From assembly GCF_006345805.1 (NCBI RefSeq), contig NW_021827399.1, positions 1 to 10,465 on the forward strand: 10,465 nt of DNA, given 5' to 3'. The position numbers were made by a program, and so were the translations under genes. Of this stretch, positions 443 through 10,465 are shown one piece after another (positions within the stretch are counted from its first letter, which is position 1; the number at the start of each line of letters is the position of its first letter). The DNA is from Octopus sinensis (Eukaryota). The notes beneath the pieces were generated by a model. That model made no database searches. It was given only the letters and a program-made list of their open reading frames with translations, and was not told the DNA's origin.

Positions 443-807
443 GGTATTTCGTCTGCCGCTACGTTCTGAGTTCAAATTCCGTCGAGGTCGAATTTGCTCT
501 TCATCCTTTCGGGTCGATTAAATAAGTACCGTTTACGCACTGGGGTCGATATAATCGACTTAATCCGTTTGTCTGTCCTTGTTTGTCCTTTCTGTGTTTA
601 GCCCCTTGTGGGTAGTAAAGAAATAGGTATTTCGTCTGCCGTTACGTTCTGAGTTCAAATTCCGCCGAGGTCGTCTTTGCCTTCATCCTTTCGGGGTCGA
701 TTAAATAAGTACCAGTTTCGCACTGGGGTCGATATAATCGAGTTAATCCGTTTGTCTGTTCTTGTTTGTCCCCTCTATGTTTAGCCCCATATGGGCAATA
801 AAGAAAT
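443..807 (+). mobile_element. Two tandem 5'-truncated units (443-625, 626-807) of a tRNA-derived SINE, same family as 9926-10465
   Basis: Direct repeats of ~183 bp, each starting ggtatttcgtctgccg and ending a(a/g)taaagaaat. Each has a B-box-like gagttcaaattcc (468-480, 651-663) and the core cttcatcctttcg(g)ggtcgattaaataagtacc. They match the body of the head-bearing copy at 9926. Confidence 0.85.
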
Positions 808-2070
808 CTATATTGATGGAATATTTTCCACACAACACAAATGATGTAGCGTCCCCAGCAACGTTGGAGAGAGTAGAGATTGAGTTTTTTAGTCGAATCC
901 AATAATCAAGGCCTCTCATGCCATCTATCTTTCTTGTTACGGACCTTTGGAGTGCTTCTACTTTCACAATGAGTTGTTTCGTTTGGAGGTGGGGATCACA
1001 GTGGTCAACACTACTCAAGGTGAAGTCGGGCAAAAGTAGAGTAGAGAAGGATGATGGTGTAGGCATCTATAAACCGGAAAGTTCTCAGAATCCAGGAGCA
1101 CATCTTGCGGGCCAAATCAACCTTACTGTTTACGTGGTAATTCCAGCTTAGATTGTTATCAACAATCACTCCAAGATCTCTGGTATTGTTTGATGACACG
1201 AGGGAAGAGCATATGGTAATTTCAGAGTTTCCTCCTTCCCAAAGTGGATCAAATCAAACTTAGTTTTCATTTAAAAGCATATTGTTTTTTACCGCCCATT
1301 GGACAAAAACAAATGGATCTGACTGAAGGTATGTTCGGCCTTCCATGCCGTTTATGGCTTCCTGGAGTTTGGAATCACCTGGAAAGATTTTCAATGTAGA
1401 ATGTTTGATGACATCTACTATGTCGTCGATGTAGATAATGAAGAAGAGTGGGCCCAGCACAGTACCTTGTGGGACACCACTACTGACTTTAGCTGAGCTG
1501 GATCGTATGCCCTCAAACACAACATATTGGGTTTTGTTCGTCAGGAAACACTTTATCCACTGCAGCAGCTTTCCACGGACTCCAAAGTTGGACAGTTTTT
1601 TTCAGCAGGATTTTGTGGTCCACTCTGTCAAATGCCTTGCTGAAACCAAGGTATACGACGTCAGCGTTGGAGCCCTCTTCCAACGCTTTTAAGACGTCAT
1701 CAAAATACTGCAGAAGCTGCGACAGGCAGTCCCTGGCATTACGGAAACCATTCTGGTTGGGGTTCAGCAGATTTTTATCTTCGAGGCAGTGAGTTGTACG
1801 CGATCTCACCACCCTCTCGAACACATCAATGATATGAGAAGTGAGTGAAATCTGACGGTAGTTCACTGCAAGGGATTTGTTTCCCTTTTTTGAAGACTGG
1901 AACGACAGACTGGGAAAAGAAAAGGATCAGGAATGTAGCCAGCATCAAGTGAGTTTCTCCAGAGCTCAGCGAGAGGGGCTGCAATTTGATGTCGATGCAT
2001 CTTCAGGACAGTGACCGGGAACTTATGGGGAACTACTGCCAAATTGTGCTGCATCATATCTGTTTCTCTA
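808..2070 (-). mobile_element. Degenerate CR1/L2-group LINE fragment (RT and C-terminal region), truncated at both ends
   Basis: Collinear frameshifted peptides on the minus strand: [86 protein letters not shown] (degenerate F/YADD), RDLGVIVD, LYSLQR..RYII..WKI. It is cut by the SINE units at 807 and by microsatellite at ~2075. Confidence 0.93.
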
Positions 2071-2078
2071 TAAATAAT

Positions 2079-2116
2079 TATGTATGTATATGTATATATA
2101 TATAATATATATATGA

Positions 2117-2172
<56 letters not shown>

Positions 2173-2389
2173 TGTGTGTGTGTACACACATATATATACG
2201 TATGTATACATATATATATACGTATGTATATATATATATGTGTGTGTATACATATATATGTATACGTATGTATAATATATATATATATATATATACACAC
2301 ACACGTATAAATATGTGCATAGATACACTATATGTATATACACATGCATATATATAGTATGTATATATATAATATATATATATATATAT

Positions 2390-2423
<34 letters not shown>

Positions 2424-2477
2424 TAGATAGATAGATAGATAGATAGAAGAAGATAGATAGTAGATAGATAGATATGT

Positions 2478-2519
<42 letters not shown>

Positions 2520-2588
2520 ACATACATACGCTTATGAATGTATATATATATTTATATTTACAAACACATTCCTCGTATATATACACAT
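2079..2588. repeat. Compound microsatellite: (TA)n/(TG)n/(CA)n mosaic, (GA)n at ~2399-2421, (GATA)n at ~2422-2472
   Basis: Read directly from the sequence. Confidence 0.97.
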
Positions 2589-2946: not shown

Positions 2947-2990
2947 ACCCAGTCTTACACTCCCCTTCTCATTCTCTCTCTTCCTCCCCT

Positions 2991-3068
2991 TGTATACATG
3001 TATACATACTTGAATGTATATATAATATGCATGTACGTGTATATATATATATATATATATATACATAT
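2991..3068. repeat. Impure (TA)n/(TG/CA) microsatellite
   Basis: Read directly from the sequence. Confidence 0.9.
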
Positions 3069-3069
3069 A

Positions 3070-3123
3070 GGCGCAGTGGCTATTGGTAAAAACCTTGCTT
3101 CTCAACCACAAGGTTCCGGTTTC
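3070..3123 (+). mobile_element. Isolated tRNA-like head of the CORE-like SINE family, truncated in the B box
   Basis: ggcgcagtggctattggtaaaaaccttgcttctcaaccacaaggttccggtttc aligns with the head of the minus-strand copy ending at 4213 (ggcgtaggagtggctgtgtggtaagtagcttgcttacaaaccacatagttccgggttc). Confidence 0.75.
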
Positions 3124-3153
<30 letters not shown>

Positions 3154-3157
<4 letters not shown>

Positions 3158-3204
3158 GACGTACAGGAAGTAAATAGGCACCTTTAATTTTCAAAATCTT
3201 TTAT
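3154..3204 (+). repeat. Tc1 terminal inverted repeat (3' TIR relative to the transposase)
   Basis: cacagacgtacaggaagtaaataggcacctttaattttcaaaat... is the reverse complement of 3682-3732. Confidence 0.88.
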
Positions 3205-3582
3205 TTGATATTAATTGGTTGAAGGTGAGGTTTTCTTCTAGCTGATCGTCCACAATACCCAAGTTTATGCAGATATATAACACACGTTCTTGGACTAACT
3301 TCTAACTGTTTTGCAATGTCAGAAGTCTTCGAACGGGATTCGTTTTCCACAATTCTCTTCAAACAGCGAAGATTCCTTTCCGAGAGCCCAGGTCGGCCGG
3401 TACGAGAATCTGTTGATTCTTTTCCTTGGCTTTTGAATTGCACTATAATTCTGTTAAACAGTAGCAAGAGGAATTTGAAGATTTTCGGCAATTTTTAGCT
3501 GGCTAAGACCAGCCTCACATTGCCCAACAATACGACTTCTTTGAAAATCTGACAGTTCTGCTGAATTTTTTGTGCGTGGTAT
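3201..3582 (-). pseudogene. Tc1 transposase N-terminal paired-like HTH DNA-binding region; DDE domain absent
   Basis: Reconstructed peptide: (ATA)[41 protein letters not shown] / +1 frameshift / NRIIVQFKSQGKESTDSRTGRPGLSERNLRCLKRIVENESRSKTSDIAKQLEVSPRTCVIYLHKLGYCGRSARRKPHLQPINIK*. It carries the GRP motif and the RRKP.L linker typical of Tc1. Confidence 0.9.
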
Positions 3583-3780: not shown

Positions 3781-4213
3781 CTCTTTCTCTTATTATTTTA
3801 CTTGTTTCAGTCATTTGACTGCGGCCATGCTGGAGCACCGCCTTTAGTCGAGCAAATCGACGACCCCGGAACTTATTCTTTTGTAAGCCCAGTACTTATT
3901 CTATCGGTTTCTTTGCCCAACCGCTAAGTGAGGCGACGGTAGTAAACACACCAGCATCGGTTGTCAAGCAATACTAGGGGGACAAACACAGACACACAGA
4001 CATACACACACACACCACACATTAATATATATATATATACATACATATATACGACGGGCTTCTTTCAGTTTCCATCTACCAAATCCGCTCACAAGGCTTT
4101 GGTCGGCCCGAGGCTATAGTAGAAGACATTACCCAAGGTGCCACGTAGTAGGACTGAACCCGGAACTATGTGGTTTGTAAGCAAGCTACTTACCACACAG
4201 CCACTCCTACGCC
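3781..4213 (-). mobile_element. Full-length tRNA-derived SINE with a CORE-like domain and internal microsatellite (octopus OR-type, tentative)
   Basis: On the minus strand: A-box-like tggctgtgtgg (4193-4203), B-box-like gggttcagtcc (4151-4161), gcaccttgggtaatgtcttctactatagcc resembling the CORE motif (gaccttgggcaagtc), an internal TA/TG tract (~3990-4051), and a 3' hairpin plus A-rich tail. The family name is from memory. Confidence 0.88.
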
Positions 4214-4307
4214 TATATATATATATTATATATTATATATATAGAATATATATAATAGATATATATTATATATTATATAATATTATATATATATTTATAT
4301 ATATATT

Positions 4308-4345
<38 letters not shown>

Positions 4346-4387
4346 TATATATTTATATATATATAATATTTATATATATATATATAT
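4214..4387. repeat. Impure (TA)n microsatellite, left flank of the LINE
   Basis: Read directly from the sequence. Confidence 0.96.
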
Positions 4388-4776
4388 CCACACTCTAATT
4401 ATATTAATATTGCTAATATATTTTTCAGATACTCTCTATCTTCTAATTAGCCTTAAGATTAAATTAAATAACGTTTAATATTATAACGTCTAATTAGCCT
4501 TAAGATAAGTAAATTAAATAACGGTTTATATTGCTAATTATTGTATATATAATTTTCAGATACTCTGTCTTCTAATTAGCCTTAAGATTAAATTAAATAA
4601 CGTTTAATATTACCACACTCTAATATAATATTTATATTGCTAAATATTTTCAGATACTCTATCTCCAAATTAGCCTTAAGATTAAATAACGTTTTTACCC
4701 AAATAACGTTTTTACACAAACTTTAATATTGTTAATATTTCTTTTTCAAGTACTCTATCTTCTAATTAGCCTTATT
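4388..4776 (+). repeat. AT-rich higher-order tandem repeat, putative LINE 5' UTR monomers
   Basis: Five copies of (ct/ca)aattagcctta (4443, 4490, 4572, 4666, 4762). Four copies of tattg(c/t)taa..ttttca(g/a)..tactct. ccacactctaat occurs at 4388 and 4613 (225 bp apart). Confidence 0.85.
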
Positions 4777-4835
4777 ATCTTCCGTCTTCTCTCGAACATA
4801 ATTAGATAGATAAACGGATAGACGGATTATCCAGC

Positions 4836-5729
4836 ATGTCCAGAGCATGGACGTGACGAGCTGGATTTATTTGTACGAGCATGGGAGTGCGCCGGCGGAG
4901 AGAGCCCTAGGGAGGTGATTGCGGCTGCGCTGAAGAGCAGAGGCTACAAGAGGACAGCGCTCAGATGGAGCGAAAGAGACAGGAATTCGTGCGCTCATAT
5001 GCGCTTGTACGGTCACACATTGGCGCACTTGATGCCATCTTTGAGAACGAGCGGAGCAAAGATGGCAGAATGGAGACGATGATGAAAGAAGTCACCCCCA
5101 CCTGGTGGACGCCCAGGAGGAGGTTTTGAATGAGAAACCTGCCCGGGAGTGAACCCAGTGCAAGTTCTCCAACCGGCAGCAAGGGCCATGGAGAAGGAGA
5201 ACCCGGTGAAGAGGTAGAGGGAGGAAGAGAAGAAGAACTAAAAGAAGGACTGGAAGAGCTAAAGGAAAAGAAAAGCTCAAGCAGGACCAAAGAGTGAAAC
5301 AACCAGAAATAGAAGTGGAACCGCAAAGGATGGAACCAAACAGCGCACACGGGTGTGTATGTTCTACCTGAGAGGTCCTGCTGGCATGGAAAGGAAGGTG
5401 CAGGCTGCCGCTTTGCACATCGGGGACCCTGCCACAGAGACACGAGGCAGATGGACAAACCATCAACACAAAGAAAAGGGATGGACACAGCACCACCTGC
5501 CCCAAAGCGGAGGTACGCAGATGTTGTGCGCGCCACAAACAGCCAACATGATGTCGAAAGAGCAGCTGCTGAGCAACAATCTTTTTTGTGCATGGCACAA
5601 AAGATTGTACAGCAGCTGACCTGGCTTCATCAAACCCAAGCCCGCAGGTGGGACTACCCACTATATACCAGACCACCACAGCAAACAGACACAGGATGGG
5701 ACACCGCCGGCAACAACGTACACCTCACC
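4836..5729 (+). pseudogene. N-terminal/ORF1-like region of the LINE: helical segment, acidic E-rich tract, CCCH-type zinc finger
   Basis: Frameshifted reading: MSRAW/RDELDLFVRAWECAGGESPREVIAAALKSRGYKRTA/QMERKRQEFVRSYALVRSHIGALDAIFENERS...EPGEEVEGGREEELKEGLEELKEK.../VCMFYLRG/SCWHGKEGAGCRFAH (C-x7-C-x8-C-x3-H after repairing a 1-nt loss at ~5376). The start codon position is inferred. Confidence 0.6.
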
Positions 5730-6400
5730 TCGATACTCCTACTGAACATCAGAGGACTGCAAACACTCAGTAACAGGACAAAGATCCCGTTCCTGAGAGA
5801 CTTTGTTGCATGCAATCAAGCCTTATGCATAGCACTTACAGAAACGCACTGAAACCAGACATAGCAGATGCGGAGTTACACATACCACAGTATGCTGTAC
5901 TACGGACCGACAGGAAAGAAAGGAGTCATGGAGGGGTGCTATGTACATCCGCGAGGACCTCACACCCCAGGTCCTCTTGTCATACTCAAACTCGGTGTGT
6001 GACACACTAATTGTACATATCAGGCAACTTGATGTAGTTGTGTGTGCTACATATCGCCCTCCAGATGCCCCAAGCCATGTGGGCAAGTTTGAAGACTGCC
6101 TTATAAAAATAGAAGAAATTCTAACCACATTAGAACAACACATAGGTGTGCTTCTTATGGGAGACTTCAATCTGCCCAATGTCAGATGGCCCGAGGGCCT
6201 TTCTCTCCCAGGAATGATAAGATGTGAACGAGGACAGGCGAGGTCCCTCCTGAACCTCATCAACACCCTGTACGTGGAGCAGGTAATACTCTAACCAACC
6301 AGGGCAGGAAACACACTGGATCTCTGCTCACAAATGACATGGATCTCATCCATAATGTGAAAGTGACACCGACACTACTCTCGGATCACAACATGATAGA
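5730..6400 (+). pseudogene. Apurinic/apyrimidinic-type (APE) endonuclease domain of the LINE
   Basis: Motifs in order: LLLNIRGL, IALTETH(L), RTDR..GGV, YRPP, LMGDFNLP..W, PTR..NTLDL, SDHN. Interrupted by frameshifts at ~5849, ~5940 and ~6327 and by TAA at 6292-6294. Confidence 0.93.
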
Positions 6401-8695
6401 GCTGACCATGTACGGGCCAAAAGAGAGCACGGACATGCAGCCTACAAGAAACCCTCAAAATCTTTCCAGCTTGAACTACCATAAGGCAAACTGGAAACAA
6501 ATTGAGAAAGAGATCCTCAAACAAAACTGGCCTAAATGTCTCTCCTCGCCAGACATCGACGTGAAACTTCAACAATTCATGTCTGTAATGCAAGCCATAT
6601 GCTACAAATGTGTCCCAGAGAGAAAGGCCACTGTACACAAGAACAAAATCCCCAGAGAGAGGAAAATTTTAATGAGACGGCGTACGAAATTTTCAAATCG
6701 CCTAAACAAACAGATTGAAAGCAGTGAAAAGTCCCGCCTAAAAATAAAACTGTTGGAAATCGAAAAATGTCTGCAACTCTCCCATGAAAAAGAAAGAGCA
6801 GACAGAGAAGCCTGGGCTATAGAGAAAACATAGAATCTAACCCCAGAGCTTTCTATAGGTATGCCAAAGAAACAGCTACAGTGCACTGTAGAATAGGGCC
6901 ACTCCTCGAAAAAGGATGGCACACTTACAGGAAAACCAATGAGGGTAAGTGAAATACTGAATGAGCAATTCAAGAGTGTTTTCACTCCACCCTTGGGCAT
7001 CTCCAAATCACCAATCCAACTGACTTTTTAACACTGCAGATATAAAATCAGAGGCGGCGACGATAGATTACATCGATATAAAGGAAGAAGATGTAACCAA
7101 GGCTATAGATGAAATGAAAACAGACTCAGCTAATGGCCCCGATGGATTCCCGGCAATCCTCCTAAAAGCATGTAAGAGAGTCCTAGCAAGACCACTGCAG
7201 TTCCTCTTTCAGAGCTTCCTTGCAGCTGGCAAACTTCCAGGAAAACTGAAGGAAGGTAAAATATGCTCCATTCAATAAAGGAGGTAGCAGAGCGGAAGCC
7301 AAGAACTATAGACCTATCTCTCTGACCTCACACATCAGCAAGGTCATGGAACGAATAGTCAGAAGGAAGCTGATCAACTTCCTTAAGAGAATGACTTGCT
7401 GCCCGACACCCAACATGGTTTCCGACCAGGGAGAAGCTGTTTAACTCAGCTCCTACAACACTATGACTGGGTTGCTGAAACGGTGGTGCTCAACCACTCA
7501 AATGTGGAAGTGATATATCTCGACTTTGCAAAGGCCTTTGATAAAGTCGATCATGGAATGATATGTCAAAAACTGCGTGATCTCAACATAGTTGGAAAAA
7601 CTGGGAGAATGGCTTCATGACTTTCTGAAGGATAGAAGTCAGGTGGTAGTAGCCAATGGGGCCACCTCCATTAACACACAAATAGTGAGCGGTGTTCCGC
7701 AGGGCACTGTTCTGGGACCACTACTGTTCATAATGGCCCTCTCAGACATGCCCTCAGCCACGCAGAGAACCACGATCACAAGTTATGCAGATGATACAAA
7801 AGTTTCACAGGCAATACAGAACCCTGAGGACACTAAACACATGCAATGTGAGCTGGACGAAATATACAAGTGGGCTGAAAAGAATAGCATGCAGTTCAAT
7901 GCTGGAAAGTTTCAAGCTTTATACTATCAGCATGCAAAACTGAATGCAATACCCAATGAATACACTGGACCCGGAGGGATTGCAATACCAGAGGCACAAT
8001 CAGTGCGTGACCTGGGTATTCACATGAGTGATGACGCGACCTTTCATGTACATGTTGCTAAACTGACACTGAAATGTAGACGGCTGGCTGGCTGGATTCT
8101 TAGAACCTTTAGAACAAGAGAACAAGAAACCATGATGGTCCTCTGGAAGACACTTGTCCTAAGCCACTTTGACTATTGCTCTCAGCTATGGTCACCATCC
8201 AGTGTCAAGTTGATCACAGAACTTGAGGTGACCCAACGAAGCTACACAAAGAAGATAGCCTCTATGCAGAATGTAAGCTACTGGGAAAGACTCAAGAGAT
8301 TAAAATTATATTCCCTGGAGCGTAGGCGGGAAAGATATGCCATAATATACATCTGGAAGATCCTGGAGGGAAGTGTCCTGAACTTTGGCATCGAGAGTTA
8401 CGCAAATGCCAGAACTGGGCGCCACTGCGTGGTGCCTAGGACTCCAAACCTGCCTTCAAGATGTAGGACAAGATTCTGTGATAGCCTGGGCTTCGAGGCC
8501 CACAGCTCTTCAATATCCTCCCGAAGAACCTGAGAGACCTGCATGGGGTGGATACAGATGTCTTTAAAATGAAGCTGGATCTCTTCCTGTCAGGTGTCCC
8601 AGATGAACCAACTTCACAGCAGGAGGGGCAGATGAGGGCAGCCTGCATCGAACTCTCTCATGCACCAAATAGCAGTTGCTAGAAAGCCTCCATGA
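6401..8695 (+). pseudogene. Linker, reverse transcriptase and C-terminal domain of the LINE
   Basis: Motifs: GPDGFPAILLK, NYRPISLTSHISKVMERIV (7304 onward), QHGFRPGRSCLTQLL, IYLDFAKAFDKVDH, SGVPQGTVLGPLLF, YADD (7784-7795), RDLGI, FDYCSQLWSP, LYSLERRRERY, GPQLFNILP, FKMKLDLFL..VPDEP, ASNSLMHQI, then TGA at 8693-8695. 7592-8533 is an uninterrupted 313-aa frame. Confidence 0.95.
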
Positions 8696-8721
8696 AGTGA
8701 AACCAAGTAGCAACACCAAAT

Positions 8722-8752
8722 GGCGGTGCCCCAGCTCATAAGCTGAAACTAG
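8722..8752 (+). other. LINE 3'-terminal recognition element (conserved box plus 5-bp stem-loop)
   Basis: ggcggtgccc-cagct-cata-agctg-aaactag; the stem cagct/agctg lies directly before the tail repeat. Function is inferred by analogy with L2-group 3' stem-loops. Confidence 0.7.
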
Positions 8753-8776
8753 AATCAATCAATCAATCAATCAATC
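8753..8776 (+). repeat. (AATC)6 3' tail of the LINE
   Basis: Six exact copies immediately after the 3' hairpin. Confidence 0.92.
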
Positions 8777-8824
8777 ATATATATTATATATATATATATC
8801 TATATATATATATATTATATATAT

Positions 8825-9397: not shown

Positions 9398-9697
9398 TTG
9401 TTTGTTTGTTCCTTCTTGAGCCACGCCTGGCTCATAAGGGCCGGTTTCCCGGTTTCCTTGGCGTATAGGTTCCCCACTTGGACGGGACGCCGGTCCGTCG
9501 CAGGTGAGCTGCAAGATGCAGGAGGAAAGAGAGAGAGAGAACGTTGTGGCGAAAGAGTCAGCAGAAGTTTTGCCATTACCTTCTGCCAGAGCCGCCTGGA
9601 GCTTAGGTGTTTTCACTCATAAACACTCACACATCGCCCGGTCCGAGATTCGAACCCGCGATCCCTCTGCTCTAACGGCTAGGCCATGTGCCTCCAC
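9398..9697 (-). mobile_element. tRNA-derived SINE with a V-SINE-like central domain and (AACA)n tail
   Basis: On the minus strand: A-box-like tggcctagccgtt (9674-9686), B-box ggttcgaatct (9646-9656), cacctgcgacggaccggcgtcccgtccaagtgggga (9472-9506) resembling the V domain (tgcgatggactggcg.cc.gtccaggg), and an aacaaacaaacaa tail at 9398-9410. Confidence 0.85.
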
Positions 9698-9925
9698 ACA
9701 CACACAGTGAAAGAGAAAGAGCAGGAAAATTACAAAAGAATCGCTATACATATGATTATATAAAGAAAATAATTTGATTAATTACTAATCGGAAGTATTA
9801 TCCACATGAAGACATAGGTTTTATAAAACTTTCAAAGACTATAAGAGATCATCAGGCAAAGATTCACATTGACATCTTATTTTTCTTATTTTTCATATTG
9901 TGGTATCATAATAATGGTGGGACTC

Positions 9926-10465
9926 AAGGCGGCGAGCTGGCAGAAGCGTTAGCACGCCGGGCGAAATGGTTAGCTGTATTTCGTCTGCCGCTACGTTCTC
10001 AGTTCAAATTCCGCCGAGGTCGACTTTGCCTTTCATCCTTTCGGGGTCGATTAAATAAGTACCTATTTCTTTATTACCTACGAGGGACTAAACACAGAGG
10101 GGACAAACAAGGACAGACATAGGTATTAAGTCGGTTACTGGTACTTAATTTATCGACCCCGAAAGGATGAAAGGCAAAGTCGACCACGGCGGAATTTGAA
10201 CTCACAACGTAACGGCAGACGAAATACCTATTTCTCTTTCTTTATTACCCACAAGGGGCTAAACACAGAGGGGACAAACAAGGACAGACATAGGTATTAA
10301 GTCGATTACATCGACCCAGTGCGTAACTGGTACTTAATTTATCGACCCGAAAGGATGAAAGGCAAAGTCGACCACGGCGGAATTTGAACTCACAACGTAA
10401 CGGCAGACGAAAACGCGCTAAGCATTTCGCCCGGCGTGCTAACGTTTCTGCCAGCTCGCCGCCTT
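9926..10465. mobile_element. Fold-back SINE composite: plus-strand head and body (9926-10063) joined to two minus-strand units (10060-10224, 10225-10412) and a minus-strand head (10413-10465)
   Basis: Starts aaggcggcgagctggcagaa and ends ttctgccagctcgccgcctt. The arms 9926-10063 and 10329-10465 are inverted repeats (about 13 differences in 138 bp, ~90%). A-box-like tggcagaagcgtt at 9938-9950 and B-box-like gttcaaatt at 10002-10010. Confidence 0.88.

What the first reader, a model, noticed from the sequence alone, without database searches (positions are those of the whole stretch)
3801..8776. SINE and adjacent LINE share a 3' box and hairpin with compensatory stem changes (candidate partner pair)
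Seen: SINE tail (minus strand, 3801-3842) ggcggtgctccagc-atggccg-CAGTC-aaat-GACTG-aaacaag; LINE tail (8722-8752) ggcggtgccc-CAGCT-cata-AGCTG-aaactag. The box matches 13/14 and the final ctgaaac(a/t)ag matches 9/10. Both have a 5-bp stem and 4-nt loop, and two stem pairs differ yet still pair (T-A to C-G, C-G to T-A). The LINE copy is ~10 nt shorter, explainable by a deletion between two cag(c) repeats. Established: L2-group LINE proteins recognise a 3' stem-loop shared with partner SINEs (e.g. eel UnaL2/UnaSINE1). Inference: this LINE family or a close relative mobilises this abundant SINE, and the covariation marks the recognised RNA structure.
Basis: partly seen in the sequence, partly recalled or inferred. 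Interest (0 to 1): 0.8.

Follow-up and report, generated by a model that had tools for sequence, protein, structure and literature searches.

The report
Octopus SINE borrows LINE tail hairpins
An abundant octopus SINE ends in the same roughly 45-base, two-hairpin RNA tail as a family of octopod LINE retrotransposons, which is the usual mark of a SINE that is copied by its LINE partner's enzyme; this is a clear new example of a known arrangement, not a new kind of system.

Summary
The SINE (window 4214-3797, minus strand) and the decayed LINE (about 5544-8777, plus strand) share a 3' tail. A covariance model built only from six LINE tails from other loci finds the SINE tail as the best hit in the window (55 bits, E=1.5e-16).

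Relatives sharpen the picture:
- The window LINE has lost 11 nt that intact relatives keep.
It has an invariant G.G mismatch next to a G.U pair. Its inner stem takes 14 different sequences in 22 tails and still pairs.
It is followed by unpaired RAAC and lineage-specific short tandem repeats.
- The SINE's H2 stem, CAGUC/GACUG, is a family trait, seen in 7 of 8 copies. All six LINE lineages with an intact tail have C-G where the SINE has U-A.
- The window LINE is a dead copy, and its deletion destroys H1.
- A related lineage (locus L001) matches the SINE's terminal repeats best.

The LINE clade (L2 or CR1) could not be resolved, and mobilisation was not tested. This is a new member of a known kind: a stringent-type LINE/SINE pair.

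The parts
3797..4214 (-). The full SINE copy: tRNA-like head (about 4214-4138), CORE-like body (about 4137-4052), an internal TA/TG microsatellite (about 4051-3980), a 3' body (about 3979-3847) and the LINE-derived tail.
   Evidence: Read. Three copies at 88-90% identity over head, body and tail lie in the O. vulgaris locus L091. The body also matches Argonauta SINEs that carry a different tail. ARAGORN and Rfam do not call the head a tRNA. Only relaxed ARAGORN on a 6-copy consensus gives a weak tRNA-like call.
3823..3842 (-).
   Evidence: RNAalifold consensus. Single-sequence minimum-free-energy fold of -17.8 kcal/mol, z=-3.4. Pair counts.
3808..3821 (-).
   Evidence: The same stem occurs in 6 of 7 O. 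vulgaris tails, and is implied by the peptide ..SFDC.. in four Octopus protein models.
3790..3807 (-). Unpaired AAAC followed by the A-rich terminal units (AAGUAAAAUAAUAAG in this copy; family consensus GAAACARGUAAAAGAGUA). This is the presumed start site for reverse transcription. The 3' boundary is approximate.
   Evidence: Comparison of 8 SINE copies. It matches the L001 LINE end, GAAACAGAGUAAAAGAGUA.
5544..8682 (+). Decayed LINE ORF2 (APE endonuclease plus reverse transcriptase), broken by several frameshifts and stops.
   Evidence: Pfam Exo_endo_phos_2 and RVT_1 on the ORF pieces. tblastn with the intact 1033-aa relative P0274 gives hits that switch reading frame (2, 3, 1, 3, 2) across 5588-8680. 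87.8% nt identity to L006 from 5544. ORF list.
4840..5543 (+). Probable ORF1 and upstream remnant of the LINE, with a CCCH-like cysteine/histidine pattern seen by eye. The boundaries and the 5' end of the element were not determined.
   Evidence: ORFs, with no Pfam hit. ORF1 of relatives L010 and L009 carries a PHD finger. The monomeric repeats at 4389-4800 may or may not belong to the element.
8722..8735 (+). The 5' half of H1 in the window LINE (GGCGGUGCCCCAGC). An 11-nt deletion (ATGGCCACAGC, or an equivalent register between the two CAGC repeats) has removed the 3' arm of H1. The junction lies within 8732-8736.
   Evidence: Alignment with L006, L001, L007, L008, L002 and L004. The fold of this copy loses H1 (z=-1.0). 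The model score drops from about 65-72 bits to about 21-30 bits.
8732..8745 (+). H2 of the window LINE: CAGCU [CAUA] AGCUG. Because of the deletion, its 5' arm reuses the CAGC of the box.
   Evidence: L006 has the same stem with loop CAUG.
8746..8777 (+). Unpaired AAAC, then UAG and the terminal tandem repeat (AATC)6.2.
   Evidence: Tandem Repeats Finder. Relatives carry other units: (AAATT)n, (ATACAAG)n and (AAAACATT)n.

Best explanation
The window is octopus DNA. It holds one copy of an abundant CORE-type SINE and one dead copy of an APE+RT LINE of the CR1/L2 ('Jockey') superfamily.

The last 45 nt or so of the SINE were captured from the 3' UTR of this LINE family. As RNA, the tail folds into a fixed module:
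- Hairpin H1: GGY-G-[4-5 bp]-loop-[4-5 bp]-G-RCC, with an invariant G.G mismatch beside a G.U pair.
- Directly abutting it, a short hairpin H2 of 4-6 bp with a free loop sequence.
- Then unpaired RAAC.
- Then a few short tandem repeats.

By analogy with UnaL2 and ZfL2, the LINE's ORF2 protein binds this structure on its own RNA and starts target-primed reverse transcription within the terminal repeats. The SINE transcript displays the same module and is copied in trans.

Shown: the homology, the structure and its covariation, the SINE's copy number, and the existence of intact ORF2 relatives. Inferred: protein binding, the initiation site, and which LINE lineage is or was the driver. An L001-like lineage shares the SINE's terminal repeats and is the best candidate.
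For: Element identities and source:
- Pfam finds APE and RT domains.
- The closest proteins come from Argonauta hians and from octopod-like contigs.
- SINE copies and SINE-derived peptides occur in O. vulgaris and O. bimaculoides.

Tail homology:
- The LINE-only model R2 hits the SINE tail at 55 bits, E=1.5e-16.
- It also hits 7 tails in 20.3 kb of O. vulgaris DNA.
- The SINE tail is 30-31/40 identical to each intact LINE tail.

Structure:
- RNAalifold predicts H1 plus H2.
- 15 of 15 intact tails fold on their own into the same two-hairpin shape; z-scores run from -1.5 to -4.5.

H1 covariation:
- The strict pattern gives 17 sense-strand hits, all just 3' of ORF2, and only 2 stray hits in 2 x 438 kb.
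- 12 of 24 eligible sister-clade LINEs have the anchor motifs, and all 12 pair with at most 1 mismatch. None of 190 background anchor sites pairs perfectly.
- 22 tails carry 14 distinct inner stems. G.G is present in 22/22 and G.U in 19/22. Inner-stem cells are 96.6% paired, against 52.8% after shuffling (0 of 2000 shuffles reach this).

H2:
- 91-94% of cells are paired.
- Pair 29-38 is U-A in 7 SINE copies and C-G in 6 LINE lineages.
- Slid-register controls pair at 0-52%.

Terminal repeats: the SINE end GAAACARGUAAAAGAGUA matches the L001 LINE end GAAACAGAGUAAAAGAGUA.

Intact ORF2 copies exist: P0274 (1033 aa), P0275 (1041 aa) and P0276 (984 aa).

Mechanistic precedent:
- PMC1636434: the UnaL2 stem with its internal loop and the UGUAA repeats are required, and initiation occurs in the repeats.
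- PMC4176376: the ORF2 region between EN and RT binds the stem-loop.
Against: - No functional test was possible.
- No sampled LINE carries the SINE's exact H2 stem (CAGUC/GACUG), and all LINE tails are about equally similar to the SINE. The true driver lineage is therefore unsampled or extinct.
- The H2 covariation amounts to about two independent events. Its closing pair is C.C in two LINEs with intact ORF2.
- The H1 set was chosen with a pattern that demands pairing, so the pair table is partly circular. The background control (0 of 190) is what carries the weight.
- Related sequences inflate the shuffle statistics.
- The sister-clade LINEs come from metagenomes of unknown host.
- The tRNA origin of the SINE head is not confirmed by ARAGORN or Rfam.
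- Published work reports only RTE, not this family, as recently active in O. bimaculoides (PMC9115989).
Confidence: 0.8

Rival explanations
1. The tail is shared and LINE-derived, but only H1 (the box hairpin with its G.G/G.U internal loop) and the terminal repeats are recognised. H2 would then be a tolerated or merely spacing element, and its 'covariation' is too thin to mark a recognition site.
For: - H1 carries far more covariation and an invariant mismatch across 22 tails.
- H2 shows only about two compensatory events. Its closing pair is C.C in L007 and L008, both of which have intact ORF2.
- H2 length (4-8 bp) and loop (3-12 nt, or far longer in L030 by eye) vary freely.
- A 5-bp hairpin occurs about once per kb by chance.
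Against: - A hairpin sits directly 3' of H1 in 15 of 15 intact tails, although its sequence is completely different in the sister clade (GGUC/GACC, GAGUAA/UUACUC, CGCUCC/GGAGCG and others).
- The SINE family fixed a double change that keeps the pair.
- In ZfL2 and UnaL2 both stem and loop matter (PMC4176376).
Confidence: 0.25
2. The SINE tail is a historical relic. It was captured from this LINE family, but the SINE's amplification was or is driven by another LINE (for example the RTE element reported as active in octopus), or by relaxed recognition. On this reading the shared tail says nothing about the working partner.
For: - No sampled LINE has the SINE's H2 stem.
- The window LINE is dead.
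- PMC9115989 found evidence of recent activity only for an RTE element in O. bimaculoides.
Against: - Several SINE subfamilies with different 3' bodies all keep the same tail, H1, H2 and terminal units. That is what selection on master copies for tail function would produce.
- Most substitutions seen in H1 of individual copies are at the CpG of GGCGG, and the rest are also transitions, as expected for decay after insertion.
- Intact ORF2 copies of the family exist.
- The terminal repeats match the L001 lineage.
Confidence: 0.12
3. The resemblance between the two tails is chance or low-complexity similarity, and the hairpins are incidental.
For: The two sequences in the window share only a 14-nt box and a 10-nt end. 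Short hairpins are common.
Against: - The LINE-only covariance model gives E=1.5e-16 for the SINE tail.
- 1 of 5000 shuffles reaches the box score.
- Six LINE lineages with an intact tail, from four metagenome or read-assembly contigs and two Argonauta loci, carry the full tail.
- Seven further SINE tails occur in O. vulgaris.
Confidence: 0.01

Closest known systems
Eel UnaL2 LINE and UnaSINE1 (stringent-type pair, L2 clade)
   Same: [quoted passage not shown] It consists of a stem interrupted by a small internal loop or mismatch, followed by short terminal tandem repeats where reverse transcription starts. In UnaL2 the internal loop and the repeats are required for retrotransposition (PMC1636434). 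Here H1 likewise has an invariant 1x1 G.G mismatch beside a G.U pair, and repeats follow the structure.
   Different: - UnaL2 has one long stem with a bulged C, a U-U mismatch and a specific GGAUA loop. Here there are two abutting hairpins, H1 loops are CCCA-like but variable, and the H2 loop is free.
- There is no sequence similarity, and no match to any Rfam family (from memory Rfam holds a UnaL2 3' element).
- The repeats are (UGUAA)n in UnaL2 and lineage-specific units here.
- L2-clade membership of the octopod LINE was not established.
Zebrafish ZfL2-1 and ZfL2-2 (ORF2 tail-binding region)
   Same: These are stringent LINEs in which the ORF2 region between EN and RT binds the cognate 3' stem-loop. 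The stem is read generally and the loop specifically (PMC4176376). This is the most likely model for how H1 and H2 are read.
   Different: No binding data exist for the octopod family. The published cTBR signature (P-W ... E..W) could not be aligned with confidence to the linker of P0274. That linker shows a conserved ..DW-x11-DW.. pattern instead.
CR1 LINEs of amniotes and their partner SINEs (for example the tortoise Pol III/SINE)
   Same: The 3' UTR has a conserved hairpin followed by a microsatellite rather than poly(A), proposed as the RT recognition site (PMC4316615). CR1-lineage ORF1 can carry a PHD finger, and relatives here do too (L010, 24.4 bits).
   Different: CR1 has a single hairpin and an octamer repeat, with a different sequence. 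PHD-type ORF1 also occurs in the L2 lineage (PMC4120745), so it does not decide the clade.
CORE-SINEs with exchangeable LINE tails (MIR/L2 in mammals; bivalve CORE SINEs with CR1, CR1-Zenon or L2 tails; octopus OR1/OR2)
   Same: The layout is a Pol III head, a conserved central domain and a LINE-derived tail. The same body occurs with different tails. Argonauta SINEs share the body (84-90% over 95 nt) but not this tail. An octopus SINE of Ohshima and Okada (1994) is listed as a CORE-SINE: OR1 in PMC4824008, OR2 in PMC4758252. Bivalve partnerships are described in PMC11481361.
   Different: I could not compare with the published OR1/OR2 sequences, which are not held. Whether the window SINE is OR1, OR2 or a further family is therefore unknown. 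No paper in the searchable library names its LINE partner.

Membership tests
Stringent-type LINE/SINE partner pair (common 3' tail) | The SINE 3' end is homologous to the 3' end of the LINE. | tested here: met
   The LINE-only covariance model R2 hits the SINE tail at 55 bits, E=1.5e-16. The SINE tail is 30-31/40 identical to each intact LINE tail. Alignments A3 and A8.
Stringent-type LINE/SINE partner pair (common 3' tail) | The autonomous partner encodes an endonuclease and a reverse transcriptase, and intact copies exist. | tested here: met
   Pfam Exo_endo_phos_2 and RVT_1 on the window pieces. Intact ORF2 of 984-1041 aa in L006, L007 and L008. The window copy itself is broken.
Stringent-type LINE/SINE partner pair (common 3' tail) | The tail ends in short tandem repeats rather than poly(A). 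| tested here: met
   (AATC)6.2 in the window LINE. (AAATT)n, (ATACAAG)n and (AAAACATT)n in relatives. The SINE ends in AAGUAAAAGAGUA-type units.
Stringent-type LINE/SINE partner pair (common 3' tail) | The shared tail forms a conserved RNA structure. | tested here: met
   H1 plus H2 appear in RNAalifold and in 15 of 15 single-sequence folds. Covariation.
Stringent-type LINE/SINE partner pair (common 3' tail) | The SINE is dispersed in many copies. | tested here: met
   7 tails in a 20.3-kb O. vulgaris locus, 3 of them full copies of the window's subfamily. SINE-derived peptides occur in O. vulgaris and O. bimaculoides protein models. The genome-wide count was not obtainable.
Stringent-type LINE/SINE partner pair (common 3' tail) | The LINE protein mobilises the SINE in trans through the tail. 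| not testable with these tools
   This needs a retrotransposition or binding assay.
tRNA-derived SINE | The 5' head derives from a tRNA and carries Pol III A and B boxes. | tested here: inconclusive
   A-box-like TGGCTGTGTGG and B-box-like GGTTCAGTCC are seen by eye. ARAGORN finds no tRNA in the window or in L091, and Rfam finds none even at E<=10. Relaxed ARAGORN on a 6-copy consensus gives a weak tRNA-like call.
CORE-SINE superfamily | A conserved central CORE domain shared across SINE families that have different tails. | tested here: inconclusive
   The body (SINE positions 70-163) is 84-90% identical to SINEs in Argonauta that carry another tail. The resemblance of CTTGGGCAAGT... to the MIR core is recalled from memory. 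No reference CORE sequence was available to align.
L2 clade LINE (UnaL2/ZfL2 group) | RT-domain phylogeny places the element within L2. | not testable with these tools
   No named reference RT sequences are on hand. The source names of the homologues are uninformative.
L2 clade LINE (UnaL2/ZfL2 group) | The 3' tail matches the described UnaL2 3' element. | tested here: not met
   An Rfam scan of the window and six LINE loci at E<=1 gave only microsatellite/miRNA noise and nothing on the tails. That Rfam includes a UnaL2 3' element model is from memory, not checked.
L2 clade LINE (UnaL2/ZfL2 group) | A stem with an internal loop or mismatch, followed by terminal repeats. | tested here: met
   H1 has a G.G 1x1 loop in 22 of 22 tails, and repeats follow. 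This is a resemblance in how it works, not proof of membership.
CR1 clade LINE | RT phylogeny in CR1, a hairpin plus octamer microsatellite, and a PHD- or esterase-type ORF1. | tested here: inconclusive
   A PHD finger is found in ORF1 of relatives L010 (24.4 bits, cut-off 24) and L009 (weak), but PHD ORF1 occurs in both CR1 and L2 lineages (PMC4120745). The tail repeats are not octamers of the CR1 type. No phylogeny was possible.

The most novel reading that the evidence does not exclude
H1 is a hairpin whose stem sequence is free, but whose G.G mismatch and adjoining G.U wobble are fixed. It may be the ancient ORF2p recognition 'hinge' of a whole CR1/L2-like LINE clade that is widespread in marine invertebrates: octopods plus many unidentified hosts in ocean metagenomes. 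H2 and the terminal repeats would then provide lineage specificity. If so, a simple descriptor (GGY-G-stem-loop-stem-G-RCC + hairpin + RAAC + repeats) would predict LINE/SINE partnerships across phyla. It would also give a compact, naturally varied RNA-protein recognition system for studying how stringent LINEs choose their template.
Probability: 0.4. Interest if true: 0.55.

Novelty: new member of a known kind. Interest (0 to 1): 0.4.

Why it matters
SINEs make up a large share of octopus genomes and are embedded in many brain transcripts (PMC9115989). Knowing which LINE family supplied their tail says which reverse transcriptase drove, or still drives, their expansion.

The result gives a concrete, testable RNA element. 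It has natural compensatory variants, a natural loss-of-H1 deletion (the window copy), and naturally intact ORF2 relatives.

It also shows that the conserved 'box' shared by many LINE and SINE tails can be a hairpin, recognisable only once divergent relatives are compared. The principle itself, stringent LINEs recognising a 3' stem-loop that SINEs borrow, has been textbook knowledge since the UnaL2 work. The gain is in detail and taxon coverage, not in kind.

Tried and rejected
- Exact-pattern scans for the box (GGYGGTGCNCCAGCATGRCCRCAG) in JGI metagenomes, IMG/VR and GTDB genomes found nothing. Those collections hold no octopod DNA carrying it.
- Rfam gave no family on the tails or on the SINE head. 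The only hits were miRNA false positives in microsatellites.
- ARAGORN found no tRNA in the window or in L091.
- Cluster names of the LINE homologues were uninformative for clade or host.
- Model R1, built from near-identical tails, was too sequence-specific to recover most sister-clade tails. I used an explicit structural pattern with a background control instead.
- L003, L005 and L010 are LINE relatives with other tails, although all have a hairpin followed by repeats. They were not used for the family alignment. L003 has an H1-like hairpin with one mismatch and is included in the 22-tail set.
- The second tail in L004 is a 5'-truncated LINE copy, not an Argonauta SINE.
- Literature searches found no statement of the LINE partner of the octopus CORE-SINE and no printed copy of the tail sequence. 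Albertin 2015 and Gilbert and Labuda 1999 were not held under the ids tried.
- I considered whether the adjacency of the SINE and LINE matters. I rejected it because they lie on opposite strands, are separated by microsatellite and other repeats, and are independent insertions.
- L2 versus CR1 assignment was attempted through ORF1 domains and the published cTBR signature. Neither was decisive.

Full report
**What is in the window**

The window is octopod genomic DNA, rich in TA microsatellites and transposon debris.

- On the minus strand, 4214-3797 is a roughly 418-nt SINE. It has a head with A- and B-box-like motifs, a conserved central body, an internal microsatellite, a 3' body and a tail.
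- On the plus strand, about 5544-8682 is a decayed LINE ORF2. Pfam finds Exo_endo_phos_2 and RVT_1 on the ORF pieces.
- tblastn with an intact relative (P0274, 1033 aa) gives hits that switch reading frame (2, 3, 1, 3, 2) across 5588-8680. The ORF list shows many stops.
- The LINE ends in a short 3' UTR and (AATC)6.2 at 8753-8777.
- The octopus origin rests on three results. The nearest LINE proteins are from Argonauta hians. Copies of the SINE at 88-90% identity lie in the O. vulgaris chromosome record OX597830.1. Peptides encoded by the antisense SINE tail occur in O. vulgaris and O. bimaculoides protein models.

**Checking the observation**

So are the 13/14 box, the 9/10 end, the two 5-bp/4-nt hairpins and the two differing but paired stem positions.

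- Within the window the box alignment is reached by 1 of 5000 shuffles. Nothing else in the window matches the SINE's last 60 nt as well.
- A 5-bp/4-nt hairpin on its own is worth little. Five occur in the 3.9-kb LINE body, against 3.8 expected.
- The strong test uses outside data. I built a covariance model (R2) from six LINE tails taken from other loci, with no window sequence. I then searched the window with filters off.
- The SINE tail is the top hit (55 bits, E=1.5e-16). The window LINE tail is second (21 bits, E=1.3e-5). Nothing else is significant.

**Relatives of the LINE and the deletion**

Protein searches with the ORF pieces, followed by look-ups of the encoding contigs, gave six further tails of the same family (54-71% aa identity in ORF2):
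- L001, an ENA metagenome contig.
- L002 and L004, two Argonauta hians lineages.
- L006, a Logan assembly with an intact 1033-aa ORF2.
- L007, with an intact 1041-aa ORF2.
- L008, with a 984-aa ORF2, flanked by an octopus-type SINE.

All six carry GGYGGTGCNCCAGCATGRCCNCAG, then a hairpin, then CTGAAAC. So they contain the ATGGCC(N) segment that the SINE has and the window LINE lacks.

L006 is the window LINE's closest relative, at 87.8% nt identity over 3230 nt. It reads ...AGCAACACCAAATGGCGGTGCCCCAGCATGGCCACAGCTCATGAGCTGAAACTAG. The window copy is identical upstream, but 11 nt between the two CAGC repeats are missing.

**The box is a hairpin**

RNAalifold on the eight tails predicts two adjacent hairpins.

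It has a 1x1 G.G internal loop.
It starts at the next nucleotide after H1.
- H2 is followed by unpaired AAAC and then the repeats.
- Within the octopod family, H1 already shows compensatory change. Pair 7-22 is C-G in five tails, U-G in L008 and U-A in Argonauta L002. Pair 4-25 is U-A, C-G or G-C.

The wider clade is what makes the case. A sister LINE at 43% aa identity (L009) keeps the outer stem UGGC/GCCA and the G.G mismatch. Its inner stem is GAUUA/UAAUU and its H2 is GGUC/GACC.

A metagenome scan with a protein alignment added 80 LINE relatives. I searched them with a strict descriptor: GGY-G, a perfect 4-6-bp stem, a loop of 3-9 nt, the complementary stem, then G-RCC.

- It hits 17 times on the LINE sense strand, each time just 3' of ORF2.
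- It also hits the window SINE and a second L004 copy.
- It hits only twice elsewhere in 2 x 438 kb.
- Of 24 eligible sister-clade loci, 12 have the anchors within 260 nt of the ORF end. All 12 pair with at most one mismatch, and 9 pair perfectly.
- The same loci hold 190 anchor-only sites elsewhere, and none of those pairs perfectly.

Across 22 tails:
- There are 14 different inner-stem sequences.
- The G.G mismatch is present in 22/22.
- The adjoining pair is G.U in 19/22.
- Each of the other three inner pairs takes four Watson-Crick types.
- Inner-stem cells are 96.6% paired, against 52.8% when partners are shuffled. None of 2000 shuffles reaches this value.

Folded one at a time, 15 of 15 intact tails give the same shape: H1 with a 1x1 loop, an abutting H2, and an unpaired 3' end. 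Their z-scores run from -1.5 to -4.5. The window LINE copy loses H1, with z=-1.0.

On the eight-tail alignment, H2 is 94% paired. Two pairs change on both sides, and the loop-closing pair is C.C in L007 and L008. Slid registers pair at 0-52%.

One SINE copy could not show whether its U-A pair was a family trait, so I looked for more copies.

- Read antisense, the tail encodes ..FQSFDCGHAGAPPLVEQID...
- A search of the representative protein library with this peptide found four Octopus-derived proteins that contain ..SFDCGHAGAPP...
- One of them led to a 20.3-kb O. vulgaris locus, L091.
- In L091 the LINE-only model finds seven tails. Three belong to full copies of the window's SINE subfamily. 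Four belong to subfamilies with other 3' bodies.
- Six of the seven have CAGUC/GACUG.

On the combined 15-sequence alignment:
- Pair 29-38 is U-A in 7 sequences, all SINE copies, and C-G in 6, all LINE lineages with an intact tail.
- Pair 30-37 is C-G in 9, U-A in 1, U-G in 1 and unpaired in 3. The window LINE is not counted at this pair because the aligner placed its 5' arm under the box; its own stem CAGCU/AGCUG also has U-A there.
- Overall 90.8% of cells pair, against 20-43% in slid registers.

The SINE's double change is therefore fixed at family level. It is still a single evolutionary event. Most substitutions seen in H1 of individual SINE copies are GGCGG to GGTGG or GGCAG, at the CpG, and the others are also transitions. 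That is what decay after insertion would give.

**Which LINE is the partner**

The SINE tail is about equally similar to every LINE tail, at 30-31/40. No sampled LINE has the SINE's H2 stem.

Beyond the conserved AAAC, however, the SINE family ends GAAACARGUAAAAGAGUA and the L001 LINE ends GAAACAGAGUAAAAGAGUA. The window LINE and L006 lineage ends UAGAAUC(AAUC)n or UAGAUAAAAUGAAAA, and the other lineages carry other units.

In UnaL2 the terminal repeats are where reverse transcription starts (PMC1636434). An L001-like lineage is therefore the best candidate driver. The window's own LINE copy cannot be the driver: its ORF2 is broken and its H1 is destroyed.

**How it most likely works**

- Shown: homology of the tails, a conserved two-hairpin structure with covariation, lineage-specific terminal repeats, high SINE copy number, and intact ORF2 relatives.
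- Inferred from UnaL2 and ZfL2 (PMC1636434, PMC4176376): ORF2p binds the structured tail, probably through the linker between EN and RT. The invariant G.G/G.U site would play the part of the UnaL2 hinge.
- Also inferred: reverse transcription starts in the repeats, with slippage, and the SINE's Pol III transcript carrying the same module is copied in trans.

**Comparison with what is known**

This works like the stringent LINE/SINE pairs UnaL2/UnaSINE1, ZfL2 and the CR1/tortoise SINE. The SINE looks like a CORE-SINE with an exchangeable tail: Argonauta SINEs share the body but not the tail.

Membership in the L2 clade is not established.
- The tails do not match any Rfam family. From memory, Rfam includes a UnaL2 3' element.
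- The ORF1 PHD finger found in relatives occurs in both the L2 and CR1 lineages (PMC4120745).
- No reference RT set was available for a phylogeny.

I found no paper that names a LINE partner for the octopus CORE-SINE.

**Verdict**

This is a clear new example of a known kind of system. The modest added value is a deeply conserved, descriptor-searchable tail module. Interest is 0.4.

Noticed in passing
window 819-1890 (-): A second, unrelated APE/RT LINE fragment, 32-53% aa identity to P0274 over the RT region. Its expected 3' end abuts copies of another SINE family.
   Followed up: partly
window 444-530, 627-719, 9925-10075 (+); 10140-10227, 10329-10465 (-): Five copies or fragments of a different SINE-like family (88-94% alike), arranged as a tandem pair at the left end and an inverted set at the right end. 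They have no H1/H2 tail: model R2 finds nothing there.
   Followed up: partly
window 9400-9700 (-): A third SINE-like element with a B-box-like GGTTCGAATC motif, seen by eye. It is a single copy in the window.
   Followed up: no
window 4389-4800 (+): Imperfect monomers spaced 94-129 nt apart (..TTTTCAGATACTCTNTCTTCTAATTAGCCTTAAGATTAAATTAAATAACGTTTAATATT..) lie upstream of the LINE homology. They could be monomeric LINE 5' UTR repeats or an unrelated satellite.
   Followed up: partly
window 3201-3491 (-): A 96-aa ORF that looks by eye like the helix-turn-helix N-terminus of a Tc1/mariner transposase, probably a DNA-transposon remnant. It was not searched.
   Followed up: no
window 3781-3924 (+), antisense of the SINE tail; proteins P0384, P0385, P0388, P0389: The antisense SINE tail encodes ..FQSFDCGHAGAPPLVEQID.., which forms the C-terminal end of predicted proteins. 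These are O. vulgaris CAI9735586.1 and O. bimaculoides A0A0L8FM37 (laminin N-terminal domain protein) and A0A0L8FIN7. XP_014789476.1 ('UTY-like') is in the same 90% cluster as A0A0L8FIN7; its sequence was not read. They are either exonised SINE tails or gene-model artefacts.
   Followed up: partly
L091 19780-20130 (-): A 116-nt tandem satellite in O. vulgaris, made of SINE B-box/CORE-like sequence (..CCAGTCCCACTGTGTGACACCTTGGGCAAGC..) ending in ..CATGAAACAGAATCA. It appears to be a SINE-derived satellite.
   Followed up: no
L006 45-3146; L007 312-3437; L008 207-3161: Uninterrupted ORF2s of 1033, 1041 and 984 aa (APE plus RT) of the same LINE family lie on short read-assembly and metagenome contigs. 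Potentially active copies therefore exist in some octopod or octopods of unknown species.
   Followed up: partly
L014 about 4790-4830; L037 about 2030-2060: Some sister-clade LINEs lack the GGYG/GRCC anchors but keep related hairpins. L014 has GAUGC[CCCA]GCAUC, with the same loop as the octopod H1. L037 has GGGA-GGUCGA..UCGAUG-ACCC. The module seems to have variants that the strict descriptor misses.
   Followed up: no
window 2100-2560, 2990-3175: Rfam 'evalue' hits to mir-297, mir-466, mir-3149 and similar families all fall in TA/TG microsatellites, far below the gathering scores. They are low-complexity artefacts.
   Followed up: yes
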